DNA from: Bugula neritina | Taxonomy: Eukaryota > Animalia > Bryozoa | DNA length: 64,000 bases | Direction of reading: 5' to 3' | Assembly: GCA_964035545.1 (NCBI GenBank) | Contig: OZ037769.1 | Location: 682,001-746,000 of the forward strand | Shown here: positions 123 through 46,100 of the stretch, piece after piece | How the letters are laid out: every line of letters starts with the position of its first letter | Position numbering within the stretch: the first letter of the stretch is position 1 | Position numbers and translations under genes: made by a program | Notes under the pieces: generated by a model | What the model saw: only the letters and a program-made list of their open reading frames with translations | What the model was told of the DNA's origin: nothing | Database searches by the model: none

Positions 123-4314
<4,192 letters not shown>

Positions 4315-20069: not shown

Positions 20070-22835
20070 ATGGTAAGTACACAGTGTATGTACATATTAT
20101 TAATATATGTTAGCAGAATCAGCAGTGCAAAAGGGTTAACTAGGCATATTATTTGGTTGAGCTTTACTGTACAAAATGTAGGAGTATTTATACTAATATT
20201 AGCTGTTTTTGTTTCAGTCAGTCAGAAGACAACTCCTGCTGCTACTGAGTGGTTACATCATCATATTGATAAAAGGACAAGATATTAAACCAGTGAATAT
20301 ATGTGATAATAATACAGTGACAGTTGATAGAGGATATGCAGGGATAATAGAACATAGAGAGATAGAGGGAGCATCTGTTAAATGTAGTCTAACTCTGAGA
20401 GCACCTGCTGGTAGTTATATCAGTATACAAGGAGTTAAGGCAGCTGAAGATGGTGCTATCTGTCCAGAGATACAGATAGATGATACAACATACTGTGTTG
20501 ACTCTACAGAACCTGGTATAATACAGAAGTTCACTCAAGAGCAGTCTGTATTATCAGTTTCTACTCTCAGCAACATGACAGGATTTAACCTGGAGCTCTT
20601 CTCAACAGGTATGTATACATAATATGATATTCAATACACAACACGCAAAACTGAAGATAACCTATATATCTATTAACTGTATTTTGTTGGAAAAATTTCA
20701 AATGCTTAGAAGTACAGGAGTAATTTATAGTTTGTAAGAAATATGTCCAATATACCATTTCTGTTACAGTGGCATCCTGTGGTGAAGATATTCAGATACC
20801 AGACAGACCTCAAGCTGAACAGTTGACTGGAATATTCACCAGCTCTTATACAACTAATAAACAGTCATTATCATCCTGTGAGTTTACAATATCAAACCTA
20901 CCAAGTGAAGCTCACTATGTTAGGTTTGATATTACTGAGCTTACAGAATCATCCAGAACTTCCTGGTTTATTGATAATCAGGAGTTTGCTAACTTCCCTG
21001 GTGGATATCTACATGACATAACCTCTACAAACAACCAACTCTCTGTGAGATATAAAAATGAGGGAGATCCTGTATCTGGAGATGTAGAGGGAGTATTCTT
21101 TATGGTTCAGTTTACAGGTGAGTGAAAAACGCACATAAATGAGTTTATAAGCATCAAAACATTATAATGCATTCGCAGCCAAAATTAGATTCTGAAAATT
21201 ACAACTGAAACTTTTTTCAGAAATATCTTGGACTTTCTCCCTGTGTCTGCCATATGCGAGCCAACTTTCTCTTTACTTTTACACAGTGTTAACATGCGGA
21301 GATAAACCTGAAATAGATCATGTGACAAGTACTCCATCTACTAAATCTCCCTGGTTCCCTGGTACAATAATAAACTATTCTTGTGAAGATACTGACCATC
21401 AGTTGAAGTATAACTCTACTTCTGAATGTAAAGTAGATGGTACAGAGGCTAAGTGGGTCAACCAATCAGAGATCAGATGTATTCCAGGTATGTATTCATA
21501 ACATTAACCTGTATAATGAGGATTATATATAGGCTTTCTTTAGTAACTGAATATAATACTTTCAAATGTCTTTTCTAGTCCCCTACTGTACAAAGAAGCC
21601 AAGAAATGTTGAGTTTACTAATAAAACTAAGACTGATACTCATACAATAGTATATGAGTGTATAAAAGGATATGAAAGTAGAGATGGAATAGAAGAAGTT
21701 GTGTCTAGATGTAATTCTACTGATACAGATAATATACCATGGATATGGAGTAATATATTCCTAAAATGTAAACCAGGTATATATATGTATATAGTAATTA
21801 TATACCATGGATATAGAGTAATATATCCCTAACATATTTTACACTACTATATATGTTCCTTGGCCTCTGCAAGTTAGTTTGTTAATAATTATTTTAGTTA
21901 AATGCGACATCACTGATCTCTCCATCAATGATTCCACGACTAGCGTCACATCTAAAGTATGGACAGCTCAAACATATGTCTACCAAGAAGTTCTATCATA
22001 TGACTGTTACCATGGTTACAAGAAAACAAACATGGATGTGGTTCAGTGTCAACATGATAAAACTTGGTCCAGTATTCCGGAATGTACAGAAGCAGGTTAT
22101 TTTTAAGTAGTTCACAAATATATTTCTCTATGCTTGCATTAATTATATGTTTTTACATTAGAATGAATACAACTTTACAAAAGTTGGTATACTTACATCA
22201 GTTTAATAAAAGCTGTAACATGTCTTTTTATAATATTTTATGATGTATTTCATCACAGTCGAGTGTGACATAGCAACACTAGCCCTATCTAATGGAGAGA
22301 TAGAAACATATTACAACTACTACGAGGGAAATAGGCTATACTACTCATGTGATAAGGGCTATTCTATGACTACAGGTTCTATCTGTACACAGTCTGGTAA
22401 CTGGTCACATGACCCTAGTTGTTCAAAGAATACATATGGTGAGCATGAGGTCATAAAGTAGAGCTATTTTTGAAAAAGTGACGTTGTTACTTTTAAAACC
22501 CCGATATTATTTCTAACAATAATGTTGTTTTTTTCAATAATAATCAATTAAGCCGCATATTTTGAAGTTTTCTATGATTTGAGATTTTCACTTTGGTTAA
22601 CCAGCAAATAATAATAATAACTATTTTCATGTTTCTTATGTTATCTAACACTTCATAAAATTATAAAAATATTTTAGGTGCTTTGATTATATGGGGAATA
22701 ATTCTGGGAGTAATAGTGGTTGTTTGTGGTGGTACTTTAATCTACATAACAACGGAAAAAAAATGTAAAAGCACCCCACCTCTGTTTCCTCGATCTTCTC
22801 GCTCAGCAAACCATCGGACCCGCAGTTGGTGTTAG
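20070..22835 (+). CDS. Receptor gene R5: SP-CUB-like x2-CCP x4-TM-short tail lacking Tyr motifs, ~558 aa
   Basis: Exons 20070-20072, 20218-20608, 20770-21117, 21287-21487, 21579-21776, 21898-22095, 22259-22438, 22678-22835; frame open. TM ALIIWGIILGVIVVVCGGTLIYI; tail TTEKKCKSTPPLFPRSSRSANHRTRSWC. Confidence 0.88.
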
Positions 22836-27200: not shown

Positions 27201-27487
27201 TGATTGGAGTGGTGGTAGTTCTGGTACTAGCAGTGGTTACACTGGGTAGTATTATTCTCTACTTGAAAAGAAGTAGTCTGCCCTGTAGAGACACCCCATC
27301 TGATAAACATGAAGTATATGAAGAACCTGTGTCTACTCGACCCTCAAACTCAGCAAATCCTCCCACCAACACTTACGAGCAGCTCACCACCTCTCCATCG
27401 TCAGCATGTGAACAACTTCAACTGAACACAACATTTCCTCTTTATGAGAACAGACAGGATATGACATCACCAGCCATTGAGATTTAG
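24267..27487 (+). CDS. Receptor gene R6: SP-CUB-like x2-CCP x4-TM-long tail with broken ITAM-like motif, ~606/632 aa
   Basis: Exons 24267-24269, 24419-24821, 24934-25281, 25467-25667, 25758-25955, 26145-26342, 26521-26697 (or -26775), 27195-27487. Tail has YEEP, YEQL-x7-CEQL, YENR. Confidence 0.88.
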
Positions 27488-30300: not shown

Positions 30301-33300
30301 TTTTTTATAGAATACTTTATGTCTGAGGTTGTCCTAATAAAGGTGTTGCCAGATTTTAGCTAACATTTTGTTAAAGCTATATATTTAGAGTATTTTATTA
30401 AATAAAAGCAGACTTATTGGAAGCAGAATTTTGAATGCACATACAACATTCTGCTTCCAATATGTCTGATTTTATGTTTACTTGTACTTCTTTACAAGAA
30501 TATAAATGTTTACTTATTTTATTACAATGCACTCCAATAAAGTATTGTATTAGAAAATGTTTAAAGAAACTAAAAAAATTTTTAATACAATTTTATTTAT
30601 TTAATATTTTTTTAATATTTTTAAAAAATAGCATCAATTAAATGGCTAATGAAGTTAGCTCAGTACAAGCATCTTGTATCACTAAAACTTGGTGTTTGAA
30701 ATGGGTAAAATATTTATTGCAATCAGCGAGCAAGTTAGATTTGTCTATCCCTATGTGAGTTTTATTGTTTTATGTTGGAAACTGATGGATTATCAAATCT
30801 ATTTTACACTTAGAAATATCTTCAGTATTAGATTATTCTTTTCACTAAGCTGTATAAACCATTGTGTAAGATTCAATGACACAGCTGGGTTGGTGCCTTT
30901 GTTGAAGCCCTCTTGTTTTCTAGTAGAAATGATAAAAATAGTTTGAATCTAAAATTTCCGTTATATAATATGAGGTGATGTATGTTGTTTACTAAATACC
31001 AGGAAAAAACTTTTGTTATTTAAAGACACTGTTATAAAAACTCTGGTAACGCAATAGATCCAGGTGTATTGTTTCTCTCCTTTGCTGTAAAAGCTTTTCT
31101 TGTTGCTATAAAGCATTCCACATGGAATGGATTGCATTATGAGTATGTTTGTATAAGCACAATGAATAAATAGAGTCAACTGGTTCATATTATGTAGTTG
31201 AATAAATTCATTTTGATACCACCATTGTTCTTTTCACAAGGAAGTGTATCTATAATCACAAGTATATATACTGAAGTATTTGACTTGTGATAATAGACTA
31301 TACTTTACCCCCTGCATGACTAGTATTATTGTGAATATATAAATCTATACTGTGCATAAGATACAACACTAGGTGTACACATCACAGCTTGTACATAAAC
31401 TATCTACTTACATGGTACCTTCAATACAATGGTAAGTACACAGTGTATGTACATATTATTAATATATGTTAGCAGAATCAGCAGTGCAAAAGGGTTAACT
31501 AGGCATATTATTTGGTTGAGCTTTACTGTACAAAATGTAGGAGTATTTATACTAATATTAGCTGTTTTTGTTTCAGTCAGTCAGAAGACAACTCCTGCTG
31601 CTACTGAGTGGTTACATCATCATATTGATAAAAGGACAAGATATTAAACCAGTGAATATTTGTGATAATAATACAGTGACAGTTGATAGAGGATATGCAG
31701 GGATAATAGAACATAGAGAGATAGAGGGATCACCTGTTAGATGTAGTCTAACTCTGAGAGCACCTGCTGGTAGTTATATCAGTATACCAGGAGTTGCTGT
31801 AGCTGAAGAAGGGGAAACCTGTCCAGAGATACAGATAGATGGTACAACATACTGTATTGACTCTATAGAACCTGGTATAATACAGAAGTTCACTCCAGAA
31901 CAGTCTGTATTATCAGTTTCTACTCTCAGCAACATGGCAGGATTTAACCTGGAGCTCTTCTCAACAGGTATGTATACATAATATGATATTCAATACACAA
32001 CAGTAAAACTAAAGATGACCTATATATCTATTAACTGTATTTTGTTGGAAAAATTTCAAATGCTTAGAAGTACAGGAGTAATTTATAGTTTGTAAGAAAT
32101 ATGTCCAATATACCATTTCTGTTACAGTGGCATCCTGTGGTGAAGATATTCAGATACCAGACAGACCTCAAGCTGAACAGTTGACTGGAATATTCACCAG
32201 CTCTTATACAACTGATAAACACGCATTATCATCCTGTGAGTTTACAATATCAAACCTACCAAGTGAAGCTCACTATGTTAGGTTTGATATTACTGAGCTT
32301 ACAGAATCATCCAGAACCTCCTGGTTTATTGATAATCAGGAGTTTGCTAACTTCCCTGGTGGATATCTACATAACATAACCTCTACAAACAACCAACTCT
32401 CTGTGAGATATGAAAATGAGGGAGATCCTACTACTGGAGATGTAGAGTCTGCATTCTTTATGGTTCAGTTTACAGGTGAGTGAAAAACGCACATAAATGA
32501 GTTTATAAGCATCAAAATATTATAATGCATTCACAGCCAAAATTAGATTCTGAAAATTACAGCTGAAACTTTTTTCAGAAATATCTTGGACTTTCTCCCT
32601 GTGTCTGCCATATGCGAGCCAACTTTCTCTTTACTTTTACAGTGTTGACATGTGGAGATAAACCTGAAATCGATCATGTGACAAGTACTCCATCTACTGA
32701 ATCTCCCTGGTTTCCTGGTACAATAATAAACTATTCTTGTGAAAATACTGACTATCAGTTGAAGTATAACTCAACTTCTGAATGTAAAGTAGATGGCACA
32801 GAGGCTAAGTGGGTCAACCAATCAGAGATCAGATGTATTCCAGGTATGTATTCATATAACATAAGGCTGTATAATGAGGATTATATATAGACTTTCTCTA
32901 ATAACTGAATATAATATTTTAAATACCTTTTCTAGTCCCCTACTGTACAGAAGAGCCAAGAGATGTTGAGTTTACTGCTAAAACTAAGACTGATACTCAT
33001 TCAACAGTATATGAGTGTATAAAAGAATATGAGAGTAGAGATGGAATAGAAGAAGTTGTATCTAGATGTAGTTCTACTGATACAGATAATATACCATGGC
33101 TATGGAGTAATATATCTCTAACATGTACACCAGGTATATGTAGGACATAGTAATAATATACTGTAAATGCTGTATACTTATTATATTCAAGCTATCTTTA
33201 TAGCTGCTAGTCTTATTTTAATAATTATACTAAATTATAATAGTAACAAGATATAACCTCTCTAAATTTAAATAAACTGCTCATTGACACCTGCTAGTAT

Positions 33301-36300
33301 AATTCTTTAATAATAACTTTAGTTGAGTGTGACATCACTGATCTCTCCATCAATAACTCCACTACTAACATCACATCTAAAGGAGGGACAACTCACACAT
33401 ATGTCTACCAAGAAGTTCTATCATATGACTGTTACTATGGTTACAAGAAAACAAACATGGATGTGATACAGTGTCAACATGATAAAACTTGGTCCAGTAT
33501 TCCAGAATGTACAGAAGCAGGTGATTATTTAGAGGTTTAAATTACTAGTATAATACAATTGTTCTATTTGCCTAAGTTTATTACTATTTCTTGTATATAA
33601 AAGAATAAACCAAACAAAAATTTCCTTTTTATTATTTTGCAATTAGTTTAATTTGTTTTGTGTCATATTTCCTATACTTTGTAATGTCTTTTACAACAGC
33701 TAAGTGTGACCCAGCAGCACTAAACCTATGTAACGGAGACATACAGACAGACATATATTACGGAGGAGATAATCTACTCTACTCATGTAATGATGGTTTT
33801 ACTAAGACTACAGATCCTGTCTGTACAGAGTCTGGTAACTGGTCACATGACCCTGGTTGTTTGTTGGTCAGAGATGGTAAAGTTTCTGCTTCTGGTTCTG
33901 GAACTACTGAAAGCACAAGAATGATTAGTTATCTAGCCCTGCAGTCTCAAAGGGGTAAGTGATGATGTTAAACCATAACACAGGCAATGTTACATAATTA
34001 TAATAATAAATGGTGGATAGAATTATTCGATCACTCCCTGCAGTAATATAATATTTATCATAAGATATTTTATTTGTCAGATAACAAAAAATTAATAAGA
34101 TAAATATGATTTTATTGATGTAATAGCTTATGACTTCGTCCAGAGCACTACTTGAAAACATAACTTCAAATCATACTCAGCGATAAATGACTTTGTTTAT
34201 TCACGTTACTAGGCAACAGTATACTAACTACTAATGTTAAATTTACAATGAGTCTGTCTGTCTGTCCTGCATCACTTTTGATATTTCATTCTATATATTT
34301 TTGATAGTTTAAAATCCCACTGTTGGAGCATACCTTTGCTAATTTTGAACTGCATTCTCTCAACTGTGAAATATTTGTGTATTCAGATAGTTTGATTGGA
34401 GTGGTGGTAGTTCTGGTACTAGCAGTGGTTACACTGAGTAGTATTATTCTCTACTTGAAAAGAAGTAGTCTGCCCTGTAGAGACACCCCATCTGATAAAC
34501 ATGAAGTATATGAAGAACCTATGTCTACTCGACCCTCAAACTCAGCAAATCCTCCCACCAACACTTACGAGCAGCTCACCACCTCTCCATCATCAGCATA
34601 TGAACAACTTCAACTGAACACAACAGTTCCTCTTTATGAGAACAGACAGGATATGACATCACCAGCCATTGAGATTTAGAACAGATGTTATATATTATAC
34701 CAGTAACTGCTTGCTCATGATGATTTGACATTTATTTTTACGGCTTAATCTTACAACTGAGCAACTTTACGTGCTTTTATTCAGTGTCTATTAAGTAATT
34801 TTCCAAGACGATATGAGGTTGTGTTCTCAAGTCAACCTTGCAAATTTATACATGTAGTTTAGAATGAAATATTTATTTTTTATTGCTAAAATGACATAAC
34901 CATTTGATTATACATAAGCATTACATTATTAATATATTGCTAAGAATGTGTGCACTGCATGCCACACCAATGATCATTTGTTATACATTTCTTTCATTTG
35001 ATTTATATTTTTTACAAATTGATCAACTAAAATGTTTGCGTAATATTTAGTTTACAGAGCAGAAGGTTTTTGTTTCATTTTAGAAATAGAGAGCTAGTAC
35101 AGAATTGGTGATATTTTGCTAGCAGCAACTTTGCAAATCAGCAACATGAATTTTTTAATAGAACACTCGTAACATATTTCTAAATAGAAATATGATAGGG
35201 AATATATTTTACAAAATAGCAAACATTTTAAATTGTAGTGCAACAAATTTTCATTATTTATTAAAACCAATAAATACACACTATATAATATTGCTTTGAG
35301 AATTGTATTGTAACTATAAGTGCCTTGTATTAATAACTATGTGCATGGGCTGGAATAAAGGTGTTCTTTGAAGTCCATATAACTGTGGGTTATCAGCCCA
35401 TTTTTCTACTAGCAATACTGATACATACTAAATGGCAACATTATAGTCTCAGCTCCACACCTCACAATAGCATGCTTAGGGGTCCTCATAACTACACAAC
35501 AACTAGTTATATTTCGCTAAACCTGTGAATAGCGCGAGTGCATAGTTACAAGCTGTTTGGGGAGCGGCTGAGTACCCACCCAGACTAGCCAAAGTTACAA
35601 CTCTTTGCTATATTATCATCTCAATTCATATACAGTTTCTACTTAACACATAAATAAGAATAAGAATTGGACTCTGCATGTTATATTATATAGTTTAGAC
35701 ATACAGTAGCTTTGCTCGATGGAGTTGTCTTCCTATAAGAGCTGTCAGTCTACAAGAGAGGATAATTCTCTTTACCCATTAATTAGGTTAGTGAGATATA
35801 ATATGTTATTATATAATAATAGTATATATAACATTACATATAATATATTATTATATATAATATTATATACAATAATATATATAATACTATATATATAATA
35901 CATTATATATAATTTTATACATAATATTATTATATATTACTATATATATAGTGTTATATATAATATTATTATATAATATTACATAATAATATTATATATA
36001 TTATTGTATAATGGTTTGTTTCATTTAGGTTTTCAGTATCAACGATTTCATCGAATACCTGTTTTCAGATATTGCATCTGTGAGTTATTAACTAAATTTG
36101 ACAGCATGAGATAGCTATAATATTGCAATGGCTATCTTTTAATTGTCAAAACTCAACACAGCATATCATGAAGTTGCTGAATCCCAAGGGAGAAAGCTGC
36201 ATTTACTCCTGCCAGCTGATTAAAGTTATTTTACAGAAGTGAACTTGCTGCCAAATGACAGTGATGCTATTTGTTGCGGATATGCAACTGCAAATGTTTG

Positions 36301-43100: not shown

Positions 43101-46100
43101 ATAACTTCAGTTTGAATGTACAGTTTCATCAACTGTGAAGTCATGCTTTCACATTATAAAAAAGAATGTCGGTATAACTGCTGAGCCTATTCTTTAAGTA
43201 ACAATTCCTTTACCAGGTGCAGACGTATCGGCTGTTCCAGCAGCCTTAGCAGACTTGGCTCGTTCTGAGACGGCTGTAGCAGGTCTAGAAGGTGGGGTGA
43301 CCAACAGTTCCTCCCTTAAAGCATCTATATCTAGTATGAAATCCGAGCTATGGTCCTTGTAGTACCTGAAACATTCAGCTCTAAGTTTAAAACTGTTTGA
43401 GTAACAATATCTAGTCACAAGAATAATTGAGGAGTAATAACTATATAAACTTGATTAAAATCATTGATAACAATACTTAAAAAAGTTTATTAGAATAAAA
43501 TATATACAAAGAAATATTTACATGTTTTATAACAATAAATAAAGAACTATAAAGAAGAAAATGTAGACAAAAAAACAGACAGACATACAGATAGACAGAC
43601 ACACAGACAGACGTTGTTACTCACTCCGGGTCGTTGCCTTCTCTATCCACAGTGTGACAGTCACCACCTGCTTTCTTCAGAGACTCGTAGAGTTCTTTGT
43701 CGACAGCGGCAGCGAAATGCATGGGAGTCAGCCCAGACTGCGCGAAATCAATATTAACAAATTAGTACTGTATATACCCTATCTTACCCTTAGCATGATT
43801 GTTACATTATATTCTCTATATTTCAGTCTATACTGTATGTAAAAATGATTAGATATGTGACAAATGTATTATTTTAACACCTGAAAGTGGAAAAGGTAAA
43901 CAGGCAAGAGAGCTGTCTGTCTGTTTGTCTGTCTACATGCAGATTACCCAGTAAAAGTAGTTGGTTTAGTACAGGTTTTACAGTAATAAACAAAATGAAA
44001 TCAGTTGAAACAATCGGTATCCAAGTACAGTAAACACTGCGTCTTGTAACGTATTACTACTCTATTGTTTCAGGTACAATGAAATCAATAACTGTACTTG
44101 AATCAGCAGACCATAAGCAATCTCAGATTTAATATTGATGTCAATTTCTTAGAAGAATGCGACACGCTGACAGAGTTGCAGTTGACAGCGACGAGGACAG
44201 AGAGAGCATGTAGTATGGTGCAAAGTACTACACGCTGTACACAAGTTGAAAAGGTGAGTTTCGCTATGATATAATACACTTGCATGGTAATTTACATTGA
44301 GTACAACAACCAATCTATAAACTAGATAGACTATATAATCTACAGGTTGTTTATATAATATGCATATAGTCTATATAATATATAGACTATACAGCCTGTA
44401 GACTACACAATAATTTATAGACAGTCTATATGATAATGATGATGTCATACTCACGCCCTCACGAATATCCATAGTCGTCTTAAACTGTTCAGCAATCCAC
44501 ATAGCAATGGCTGTGTGTTTGAGTATGACAGCTTTGTGTAGAGGAGTTAATTTACTAGCGTCAGGCATGACAGCAAGCTCTCTTCTGTTTAGTGACATTT
44601 TCACTGTCCTCAACTCTCCCGACAACACTGCATCGTGGACTTTGTATATCATTTCCTGAAAAACATGGCGGTTTGAAATTGACTTTCAAATACAACATCT
44701 CATTTCATAGAGTAAAATTCTCATTTCTAGTCATATGAATATTGAACACTGCTAGTTAAACTATTAGCCAATCAAAAACTGTGTACATGCTCCATCTTTC
44801 TACCAATCACAACTCAGCTCACATATTACTAAAATATATGTTCAATAATATTGGCAGAGTAGCTGTCTTTTATACTTTTGGTTGTCATTATTATATTATC
44901 AGCTTCACTGTGTACTATAGGTATGAGTCATAAACGATCCAATCATTCTCACTCACAATTGACTCGTACTGCATACTACTACCTACTCTCGCTGAATACT
45001 ACTAGTGTTTCTCACTCAGTACTAATAGTGACTCTCAATTGAGTACTGGTAGTGACTCTCCCTGTGCATTACTAATGACTTTCACTTCCTACTACATGTA
45101 GTTACTCTTACTGCATACTGCAAGTAACTGTCACTACATACTGCAAGTAACTGTCACTACATACTGCAAGTAACTGTCACTACATACTGCAAGTAACTGT
45201 CACTACATACTGCAAGTAACTGTCACTACATACTGCAAGTAACTGTCACTACATACTGCAAGTAACTGCCACTACATACTGCAAGTAACTGTCACTACAT
45301 ACTGCAAGTAACTCTCACTACATGCTGTAAGTAACTGTCACTACATACTGCAAGTAACTGTCACTACATACTGCAAGTAACTCTCACTACATACTGCAAG
45401 TAACTGTCACTACATACTGCAAGTAACTGTCACTACATACTGCAAGTAACTGTCACTACATACTGCAAGTAACTGTCACTACATACTATAATGATGACTC
45501 ACTGATGAGCTCTGTTTGAGTAAGTTACTCTCGTATGACGCAACGAATGCCTCCATATCTAGAGGATCAGCTTTCATTGCTGTCACATCGAGTCCATTAA
45601 TATCTTTTATCTGTTCGTCAGCCTTTGCATCCGTCAGTATTTTCACAATAGCTTCACCAACTTCTCCTTTTATACAAACAGCATAGTGGAGGGCTGTACG
45701 TCCCATCTGAAACATCAACACAGATATGTATTATGCCTATCATATAAGAGTCTATAATATATTGTTTTGTGTTAGCATTTAAGAAAGCAAGACAGCTTCA
45801 AGATTCAAAAGTTAGGTATGTATTTAGTTGCTTAAACTTCATTCCAATTAGTAACTTATATGGTTACTAAGTTTATGAATCTCACATGTTACATAATTGG
45901 AAAATTTTAGAATTGTGCTCCTTTCAAATTTGGTAGTAAAATTATAAACAATTTCTATTATATTGTGTCAGCAGTTATATTCTAAACTAAATACTTATGA
46001 CTAAAAGTAGAAGCATTAAAAAATCAGCTGTGAAAGTAGTGAACAATCAGGTCATACCTTTGGTTTTAGAGAAGCATACTATTCCCTTATTAGCTGGCAA

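What the first reader, a model, noticed from the sequence alone, without database searches (positions are those of the whole stretch)
34566..34610. Intact ITAM-like motif YEQL-x7-YEQL in the R7 tail, with extra SH2 docking sites
Seen: TNTYEQLTTSPSSAYEQLQL has canonical YxxL-x(6-8)-YxxL spacing, flanked by YEEP (YxxP) and YENR (YxN). Known: ITAMs recruit Syk-family tandem SH2 kinases, pYxN binds Grb2, pYxxP binds Nck/Crk-type SH2. The second half (SAYEQL) also fits the ITIM consensus SxYxxL. Inference: R7 signals through phosphotyrosine; the direction of signalling is unresolved.
Basis: partly seen in the sequence, partly recalled or inferred. Interest (0 to 1): 0.85.

Follow-up and report, generated by a model that had tools for sequence, protein, structure and literature searches.

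The report
ITAM-like tail on bryozoan receptor
A surface-receptor gene of what is probably the moss animal Bugula neritina ends in a short tail carrying the same paired-tyrosine signal that vertebrate immune receptors use to switch cells on, and the genome encodes the kinases that read such signals, but nothing yet shows that the signal is used.

Summary
Window 34566-34610 (+) encodes YEQL-x7-YEQL, flanked by YEEP and YENR. It lies in the last exon (34387-34679) of an intact eight-exon gene (R7, 628 codons): signal peptide, two unassigned beta domains, four Sushi-type modules, a TM helix and a 73-residue tail.

For a real signalling tail:
- Shuffled tails give the motif in 0.3% of trials.
- Every tail tyrosine is followed by Glu.
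- The two YEQL differ at all four third codon positions.
- A paralogue subfamily about 47% identical keeps all four Tyr-Glu sites and its own pair (YEKL-x9-YEKL); tail dN/dS is 0.25-0.35.
- The genome encodes a classical Syk/ZAP-70-type kinase, a Shark-type kinase, a Src-type kinase and an SH2-SH2-phosphatase.
- Spliced RNA contigs confirm the exon 7 to exon 8 junction and frame, but only for a paralogue.

Against:
- The seven near-identical copies show no purifying selection (13 non-synonymous, 2 synonymous changes), and R6 has lost the second Tyr.
- No orthologue was found outside this species.
- The classical acidic residue at -3 is absent.
- The motif also fits ITIM and YxxPhi sorting signals.

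Function is inferred, not shown. The scan had already noted this family on other DNA, about 150 kb beyond the window (s1-456700).

The parts
31429..31431 (+). R7 exon 1: start codon, followed by a GT donor
   Evidence: Reading. RNA-contig joint 31430>31576 (cut +1), GT..AG, in runs X1 and X3. Checked.
31577..31967 (+). R7 exon 2: signal peptide (about 21 residues) plus membrane-distal beta domain 1, with no Pfam match
   Evidence: Open frame with AG/GT sites. No Pfam hit. AF2 single-sequence model is all-beta but poor, pLDDT 44.
32128..32475 (+). R7 exon 3: beta domain 2, weakly CUB-like at best
   Evidence: Open frame with AG/GT sites. No Pfam hit. AF2 pLDDT 59. Foldseek finds nothing significant; the weak top rows include several CUB domains.
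32643..32843 (+). R7 exon 4: Sushi-like module 1 (four Cys, below the Pfam cut-off)
   Evidence: RNA joint 32843>32936.
32936..33133 (+). R7 exon 5: Sushi-like module 2 (four Cys, no Pfam hit)
   Evidence: RNA joints 32843>32936 and 33133>33323.
33323..33520 (+). R7 exon 6: Sushi module 3
   Evidence: Pfam PF00084, 36.3 bits against a cut-off of 20.7.
33700..33954 (+). R7 exon 7: Sushi module 4 plus Ser/Thr-rich stalk
   Evidence: Pfam PF00084, 23.6 bits. The same donor is used in the spliced RNA of paralogue L007.
34387..34679 (+). R7 exon 8: transmembrane helix plus 73-residue cytoplasmic tail and stop codon
   Evidence: RNA contigs cover 34424-34670 and 34456-34658 and keep both Tyr codons.
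34392..34457 (+). Transmembrane segment (22 hydrophobic residues) followed by Lys-Arg
   Evidence: Direct reading.
34509..34520 (+). YEEP, the most widely kept tyrosine motif of the family
   Evidence: Invariant in alignment A1. Also present in R1 (L015) and in an unrelated receptor tail at C5:1.2837 Mb.
34566..34610 (+). ITAM-consensus pair YEQL-x7-YEQL; the second half also fits ITIM (SAYEQL)
34635..34646 (+). YENR (YxN, Grb2-type motif)
27374..27418 (+). Counterpart in the neighbouring paralogue R6: same stretch with the second Tyr codon TAT changed to TGT (Cys)

Best explanation
R7 is an intact type-I membrane receptor of a lineage-specific multigene family, probably of the bryozoan Bugula neritina. 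Its ectodomain has two unassigned beta domains and four Sushi-type modules. Its 73-residue, Ser/Thr/Pro-rich tail is a phosphotyrosine docking array of four Tyr-Glu motifs: YEEP, YEQL, YEQL and YENR.

The most likely mechanism has three steps. Ligand-driven clustering lets a Src-family kinase phosphorylate the tail. The doubly phosphorylated YEQL-x7-YEQL pair then binds the tandem SH2 domains of the animal's Syk-type or Shark-type kinase, giving an activating signal. YEEP and YENR add single-SH2 adaptors (Crk/Nck-type and Grb2-type).

Inferred: phosphorylation, SH2 binding, and the activating direction.
For: 1. The motif is exact and at the stated place and arises in only 0.32% of composition-matched shuffles.

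2. All four tail tyrosines are followed by Glu, as are five of five in the divergent subfamily.

3. The two YEQL are coded TAC GAG CAG CTC and TAT GAA CAA CTT. All four codons differ, every difference is synonymous, and the flanks are unrelated.

4. Subfamily L010-L013 is 47-48% identical in the tail, with dN about 0.48, dS about 1.4-2.0 and omega 0.25-0.35. It keeps all four Tyr-Glu sites in the alignment and has its own ITAM-spaced pair, YEKL-x9-YEKL.

5. Independent JGI contigs from Bugula neritina samples keep the tail exons at 95-97% identity, against 85-91% or less in the 3' flank. They retain every tyrosine.

6. RNA-like contigs cover exons only and join them at GT..AG. One joins the exon-7 donor of paralogue L007 to the exon-8 acceptor in the predicted frame. 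Contigs over the tail keep both Tyr codons while the spacer varies (T>I, S>P, Q>K).

7. The genome encodes the needed reader enzymes. There is a classical SH2-SH2-kinase whose pieces best match ZAP-70/SYK (L025). There is an SH2-ankyrin-SH2-kinase of Shark type whose kinase best matches SYK (L020). There is an SH3-SH2-kinase of Src type (L024). There is an SH2-SH2-phosphatase locus.

8. Precedents exist in invertebrates: the oyster CgIgR ITAM binds CgSyk (PMC6994640), and Hydractinia Alr tails carry ITAM/ITIM (PMC9546547).
Against: Among the seven near-identical R7-type tails, substitutions look neutral: 13 non-synonymous against 2 synonymous, mean dN 0.028 and dS 0.012. One of them removes the second ITAM tyrosine in R6 and another changes its +1 residue. 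Tyr retention inside this subfamily therefore says little.

Under the MAFFT alignment the ITAM-spaced pair is built from different sites in the two subfamilies: sites 2-3 with x7 against sites 3-4 with x9.

The classical acidic residue at -3 of the first Tyr is absent (Thr-Asn-Thr).

No homologue of the tail was found outside this species in 1.84 billion representative proteins, so there is no orthologue test.

No R7-specific transcript was shown. Tail-exon contigs have far lower word depth than ectodomain contigs.

Each half is also a YxxPhi sorting signal, and the second half is an ITIM match.
Confidence: 0.45

Rival explanations
1. The tail is a multi-adaptor phosphotyrosine scaffold in which each phosphotyrosine acts alone. 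Src-type SH2 would bind YEQL or YEEP, Crk/Nck-type would bind YEEP, and Grb2-type would bind YENR. The ITAM spacing is incidental and no tandem-SH2 kinase is engaged.
For: The conserved feature across subfamilies is the array of Tyr-Glu sites rather than a fixed pair. The +3 residue and the spacing drift: YEQL against YEEM, YENR against YEKL, x7 against x9. YEEP is the most widely kept motif and recurs in another receptor family. R6 tolerates loss of one ITAM tyrosine.
Against: Both subfamilies still keep exactly one ITAM-spaced YExL pair. The two YEQL are identical at the protein level despite four synonymous differences. Syk-type and Shark-type kinases are both encoded.
Confidence: 0.2
2. 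The motif works as an inhibitory or dual signal. SAYEQL would be an ITIM that recruits the SH2-SH2-phosphatase, or a partly phosphorylated ITAM would act as an inhibitory ITAM.
For: SAYEQL fits [S/I/V/L]xYxx[I/V/L]. The corresponding site in the divergent subfamily is SLYEKL, and its C-terminal SAYENI also fits. An SH2-SH2-phosphatase locus lies at C3:23.740-23.749 Mb.
Against: The Ser at -2 is the weakest ITIM variant. The first YEQL (Asn at -2) does not fit ITIM, yet it is kept. The 7-residue spacing is the commonest ITAM spacing in vertebrate chains (recalled from established knowledge, not tested here).
Confidence: 0.12
3. The YEQL motifs are YxxPhi endocytic or lysosomal sorting signals read unphosphorylated by adaptor-protein complexes. 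On this reading R7 is an endocytic or scavenger receptor rather than a signalling one.
For: YEQL is a perfect YxxPhi (direct reading). Vertebrate CUB/Sushi ectodomains include endocytic or cargo receptors (recalled, not tested here).
Against: Sorting signals do not need two copies at ITAM spacing, a Glu at +1 of every tyrosine, or the accompanying YEEP and YxN motifs.
Confidence: 0.13
4. It is a chance match in a young, fast-evolving gene copy with no dedicated function.
For: dN/dS is at or above 1 among the seven recent copies, and R6 has lost the tyrosine. There are no orthologues. A 0.3% chance per tail is not negligible across a whole-genome scan.
Against: Between subfamilies omega is 0.25-0.35 and all Tyr-Glu sites are retained. 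The exon is better conserved than its flank against independent contigs. The Tyr-Glu context holds at every tyrosine.
Confidence: 0.1

Closest known systems
Vertebrate ITAM chains (FcR gamma, DAP12, CD3 zeta, Ig alpha/beta) and FcgammaRIIA
   Same: Two YxxL separated by 7 residues in a disordered cytoplasmic tail. Syk-family and Src-family kinases are available in the genome.
   Different: The motif sits on the ligand-binding chain itself, as in FcgammaRIIA, not on a small adaptor chain. There is no acidic residue at -3 and no sequence homology. The ectodomain is Sushi-type plus unassigned beta domains rather than Ig.
Drosophila Draper with Shark
   Same: An invertebrate single-pass receptor carrying its own ITAM, read by a Shark-type SH2-ankyrin-SH2 kinase after Src phosphorylation. 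A Shark-type gene is present here.
   Different: Draper has EGF-type repeats and a wider spacing between its ITAM tyrosines (recalled, not checked here). There is no homology of the tails.
Oyster CgIgR (PMC6994640)
   Same: A lophotrochozoan receptor with an ITAM in its own tail (YTEL-x8-YEKL), shown there to bind CgSyk. Its second half, YEKL, is identical to the motif of the L010-type Bugula tails.
   Different: Five Ig domains instead of Sushi-type modules. It has the classical acidic residue upstream. It has experimental support, which R7 lacks.
Hydractinia Alr family (PMC9546547)
   Same: A clustered, fast-evolving multigene family of a colonial invertebrate. Its tails are highly diverse, some with ITAM and some with ITIM. 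[quoted passage not shown]
   Different: Ig-like/Fn3-like ectodomains, a cnidarian host, and no sequence relationship.

Membership tests
ITAM (immunoreceptor tyrosine-based activation motif) | Two YxxL/I separated by 6-8 residues (wider definitions allow 6-12) | tested here: met
   YEQL-x7-YEQL at 34566-34610.
ITAM (immunoreceptor tyrosine-based activation motif) | Located in the cytoplasmic part of a membrane receptor or adaptor | tested here: met
   Signal peptide in exon 2, a 22-residue hydrophobic segment followed by Lys-Arg, and the motif 36 residues beyond it. Topology is predicted, not measured.
ITAM (immunoreceptor tyrosine-based activation motif) | Acidic residue at -3 of the first tyrosine (classical D/ExxYxxL/I form) | tested here: not met
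   The residues before the first Tyr are Thr-Asn-Thr. The stricter pattern does not match.
ITAM (immunoreceptor tyrosine-based activation motif) | Both tyrosines conserved in relatives | tested here: inconclusive
   Both are kept in 6 of 7 near-identical copies and in all independent contigs, but those copies evolve neutrally. The 47%-identical subfamily keeps the tyrosines but forms its pair from other sites. No orthologues were found.
ITAM (immunoreceptor tyrosine-based activation motif) | A Syk-family tandem-SH2 kinase is available in the organism | tested here: met
   Syk/ZAP-70-type gene at G000:C4:3.663-3.670 Mb. Shark-type gene at C7:14.371-14.378 Mb.
ITAM (immunoreceptor tyrosine-based activation motif) | Tyrosines are phosphorylated and then bind the tandem SH2 domains | not testable with these tools
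   Needs biochemistry.
ITIM | [S/I/V/L]xYxx[I/V/L] in a cytoplasmic tail | tested here: met
   SAYEQL (second half). The first half, NTYEQL, does not fit. Definition as quoted in PMC9546547.
ITIM | Recruits an SHP- or SHIP-type phosphatase | not testable with these tools
   Only the presence of an SH2-SH2-phosphatase locus was shown.
Sushi/CCP-module receptors | Modules of about 60 residues with four Cys that match Pfam PF00084 | tested here: met
   Exons 6 and 7 score above the cut-off (36.3 and 23.6 bits). Exons 4 and 5 have the size and the four Cys but fall below the cut-off.
CUB-domain receptors | CUB fold or a Pfam PF00431 match in the membrane-distal domains | tested here: inconclusive
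   No Pfam hit. Single-sequence AF2 models are poor. The best Foldseek E-value is 0.012, with CUB domains among the weak top rows.

The most novel reading that the evidence does not exclude
Bugula carries a convergently evolved paired-receptor system. It would be a fast-diversifying Sushi-type receptor family whose near-identical ectodomains are wired to an ITAM tail read by Syk or Shark (R7 and five others), to a naturally disabled tail (R6, Tyr to Cys), to truncated single-tyrosine tails, or to a tyrosine-free stub (R5). Such a system would serve immune or colony self/non-self recognition in a phylum where no such receptors are known.
Probability: 0.2. Interest if true: 0.75.

Novelty: new member of a known kind. 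Interest (0 to 1): 0.45.

Why it matters
ITAM signalling is the core switch of vertebrate lymphocyte and myeloid receptors. Outside vertebrates it has experimental support in only a few cases, such as Draper-Shark and oyster CgIgR-Syk. The held literature contains no paper on bryozoan ITAM receptors.

This is a clustered, diversifying receptor family in a colonial bryozoan. It has ITAM-type tails, natural tyrosine-loss variants next door, and both Syk-type and Shark-type kinases in the genome. That combination would give a directly testable system for asking how activating and non-activating receptor pairs arise independently of vertebrate immunity. The R6/R7 pair is a ready-made natural mutant control.

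Tried and rejected
- A profile of ten tails was searched against 1.84 billion representative proteins. It returned only three fragments of the same host.
- A word-indexed search with the tail gave four JGI fragments. There are therefore no orthologues for a conservation test.
- The look-up of sequencing runs listed no run on record as RNA. The contigs nevertheless behave as spliced RNA. They come from alleles or paralogues, not demonstrably from R7.
- The consensus of the loose ends at 33860 was searched in the window and the genome, with no match. The origin of the abundant alternative stalk sequence is unresolved.
- AF2 single-sequence models of the two distal domains were too poor for a fold assignment.
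- Organism identification by COX1 was dropped, because the tools give no organism for protein hits. Instead, the JGI record prefix AY690838 was traced to the Bugula neritina mitogenome paper.
- The eight exons were never joined.

Full report
**Observation**

The stretch 34566-34610 on the + strand reads TAC GAG CAG CTC ... TAT GAA CAA CTT. This is YEQL, seven residues (TTSPSSA), then YEQL.

It lies in an open frame that starts at 34389 and has these parts:
- a 22-residue hydrophobic segment (34392-34457);
- Lys-Arg;
- a 73-residue Ser/Thr/Pro/Asn-rich tail with VYEEP (34509-34520), the pair, and LYENR (34635-34646);
- a stop at 34677-34679.

SAYEQL also fits the ITIM pattern as defined in PMC9546547.

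**Gene model**

Upstream I read seven further exons, all with AG/GT sites and all open:
- exon 1: ATG at 31429-31431;
- exon 2: 31577-31967;
- exon 3: 32128-32475;
- exon 4: 32643-32843;
- exon 5: 32936-33133;
- exon 6: 33323-33520;
- exon 7: 33700-33954;
- exon 8: 34387-34679.

Together they make 1887 nt, or 628 codons plus the stop. Every internal exon is in phase 1.

Exon 2 opens with a signal peptide. Exons 6 and 7 pass the Pfam Sushi cut-off. Exons 4 and 5 have the size and four cysteines of Sushi modules but score below it.

Exons 2 and 3 encode all-beta domains with no Pfam match. Single-sequence AF2 models were poor (pLDDT 44 and 59). Foldseek gave nothing significant, only weak rows that include several CUB domains. 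'CUB-like' therefore remains a lead.

The exons were not joined for any search or fold. Each was handled by reference.

**Transcription and splicing**

Contigs of four public runs cover the exons and leave the introns at zero depth. They join exons at GT..AG: 31431>31577, 32843>32936 and 33133>33323. They are therefore spliced RNA, even though the records do not say so.

One contig that begins at 34386 carries 13 preceding letters. These are identical to the end of exon 7 of paralogue L007 at G000:C5, about 937 kb. The exon 7 to exon 8 junction and its frame are thus proven for a paralogue whose tail is 90% identical. For R7 itself they are inferred from identical donor and acceptor sequences.

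Contigs over the tail differ from R7 at a few places: His>Gln, Thr>Ile, Ser>Pro, and Gln>Lys at +2 of the second motif. Both Tyr codons are kept.

Tail-exon contigs have much lower word depth than ectodomain contigs. Many contigs diverge just after Sushi 4 at 33860. Most family transcripts in those samples therefore carry other 3' ends.

**The family**

The window is G000:C5:682001-746000 of a 216-Mb assembly. The tail exon has these relatives on the same contig:
- six near-identical copies: R6 in the window and five at 897-949 kb on the other strand;
- two truncated copies ending soon after a single YEFV;
- four copies about 47% identical;
- two remote ones (R1 and a gene just upstream of the window).

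R5 in the window ends in a short tail with no cytoplasmic tyrosine motif (22683-22835).

Earlier notes of this scan had already described the second cluster as a CUB-Sushi variable receptor family of at least 22 genes (s1-456700). They also named the organism as probably Bugula neritina.

The organism lead has indirect support. The only database relatives of the tail are fragments on JGI metagenome records whose names begin with AY690838. That is the GenBank accession of the Bugula neritina mitochondrial genome (PMC2678162). I did not verify the organism otherwise.

**Is it more than chance?**

Shuffling the tail gives an ITAM match in 0.32% of trials. That is low for one tail but not decisive for a whole-genome scan. 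Four further points raise it.

1. Every tail tyrosine is followed by Glu: four of four in R7 and five of five in the divergent subfamily.

2. The two YEQL differ at the third position of all four codons and have unrelated flanks. Their identity at the protein level is therefore not a recent DNA duplication. If they share an origin, four synonymous and no non-synonymous changes point to purifying selection. That assumption is flagged as such.

3. Between the R7-type and L010-type tails, dN is about 0.48 and dS 1.4-2.0, giving omega of 0.25-0.35. All four Tyr-Glu sites align. The divergent tails carry YEEP, YEEM, YEKL-x9-YEKL and YENI.

4. Against independent JGI contigs, the tail exons are 95-97% identical while the adjoining 3' flank is 85-91% or less.

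**What weakens it**

- Among the seven young copies I count 13 non-synonymous and 2 synonymous changes in the tail (mean dN 0.028, dS 0.012). One change is the Tyr-to-Cys of R6 and one is Glu-to-Asp at +1 of the same site in L004. Retention of the tyrosines inside this subfamily is uninformative, and the loss in R6 shows the second tyrosine is dispensable for at least one copy.
- Under the MAFFT alignment the ITAM-spaced pair uses sites 2-3 in R7 and sites 3-4 in the divergent subfamily. What is conserved is an array of Tyr-Glu motifs with one ITAM-spaced pair, not a fixed ITAM.
- The classical acidic residue at -3 is absent.
- No homologue exists outside the species in the libraries searched.

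**Reader enzymes**

An SH2 scan and a tyrosine-kinase scan of the genome coincide at several loci.

- L025 (C4:3.663-3.670 Mb) reads SH2, linker, SH2, kinase. Its first SH2 best matches residues 5-55 of ZAP-70 and SYK. A kinase exon best matches ZAP-70 and SYK.
- L020 (C7:14.371-14.378 Mb) reads SH2, three ankyrin-repeat exons, SH2, kinase. This is the Shark architecture. Its kinase exon best matches SYK.
- In all four of these SH2 domains, the conserved FLVR-type phosphotyrosine-binding arginine can be read in the open frames.
- L024 is an SH3-SH2-kinase of Src type.
- Tandem SH2 exons at C3:23.740-23.745 Mb are followed by phosphatase exons at 23.7477 and 23.7483 Mb, an SHP-type gene.

Both an activating and an inhibitory reading are therefore biochemically possible.

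**Context in the genome**

A tail of another Sushi-bearing receptor at C5:1.2837-1.2842 Mb has the same YEEP-x2-MST element. It continues with a DDTYSKV repeat array and then YSRL-x8-YDKI (lead from s1-456942). The design of YEEP followed by a tyrosine array that includes an ITAM-spaced pair thus recurs. This argues for a used signalling module.

**Verdict**

The best reading is a phosphotyrosine docking tail whose YEQL pair recruits Syk or Shark (confidence about 0.45). That the tail is some kind of phosphotyrosine signalling tail is more likely, at about 0.75.

The rivals are:
- a scaffold of independent single-SH2 sites (0.2);
- endocytic YxxPhi signals (0.13);
- ITIM-type inhibition (0.12);
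- chance (0.1).

In kind this is a new member of the known class of invertebrate receptors with ITAM-type tails: Draper, oyster CgIgR (PMC6994640) and Hydractinia Alr (PMC9546547). It occurs in a phylum where none is described in the held literature. The scan had already flagged the family and other ITAM-type tails in this genome.

Noticed in passing
G000 small contigs (e.g. C10, C15, C33, C66, C170, C176, C201, C304): Kinase and phosphatase matches on many small contigs have numerous in-frame TAA/TAG codons but no TGA. This is as expected for a ciliate with reassigned stop codons, so the assembly probably holds an epibiont or contaminant.
   Followed up: no
window 22683-22835 (+): Paralogue R5 ends in a TM exon with a short tail of about 25 residues and no cytoplasmic tyrosine motif. 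This contrasts with the four-tyrosine tails of R6 and R7.
   Followed up: partly
L008:1462-1695 (-) and L009:1465-1698 (-) (G000:C5, about 902 and 917 kb): These two family members have a truncated tail that keeps YEEP but ends soon after a single YEFV. The same class appears in independent JGI fragments as YELV.
   Followed up: partly
L026:719-1207 (+) (G000:C5:1283719-1284207): This is a tail of another Sushi-bearing receptor. It has the same YEEP-x2-MST element, then five DDTYSKV-like repeats, then YSRL-x8-YDKI.
   Followed up: partly
window 33860: Most RNA contigs covering Sushi 4 continue beyond 33860 with a different stalk sequence. That sequence is found neither in the window nor in the assembly at up to 3 mismatches. 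The abundant transcripts of the family therefore come from copies or alleles that are not in this assembly, or are too diverged.
   Followed up: partly
window 45031-45559, 1523-1825 and 3424-3699: There are tandem repeats of 23-nt units (about 23 copies), 19-nt units (about 16 copies) and a long (TA)n tract.
   Followed up: no
G000:C6:11174072-11175412 and C321:12636-13976: A near-full COX1 copy with the same nine TGA codons lies inside the large contig C6 as well as on the small contig C321. It is a recent nuclear mitochondrial insertion or an assembly join. Further COX1 genes on C17, C214 and C73 suggest other organisms in the assembly.
   Followed up: no
window 34665-34676: R6 and R7 tails end in Ala-Ile-Glu-Ile. 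The five copies of the second cluster stop two codons earlier at a TGA (..Pro-Val-Ile). The two clusters therefore differ at the C-terminus.
   Followed up: no
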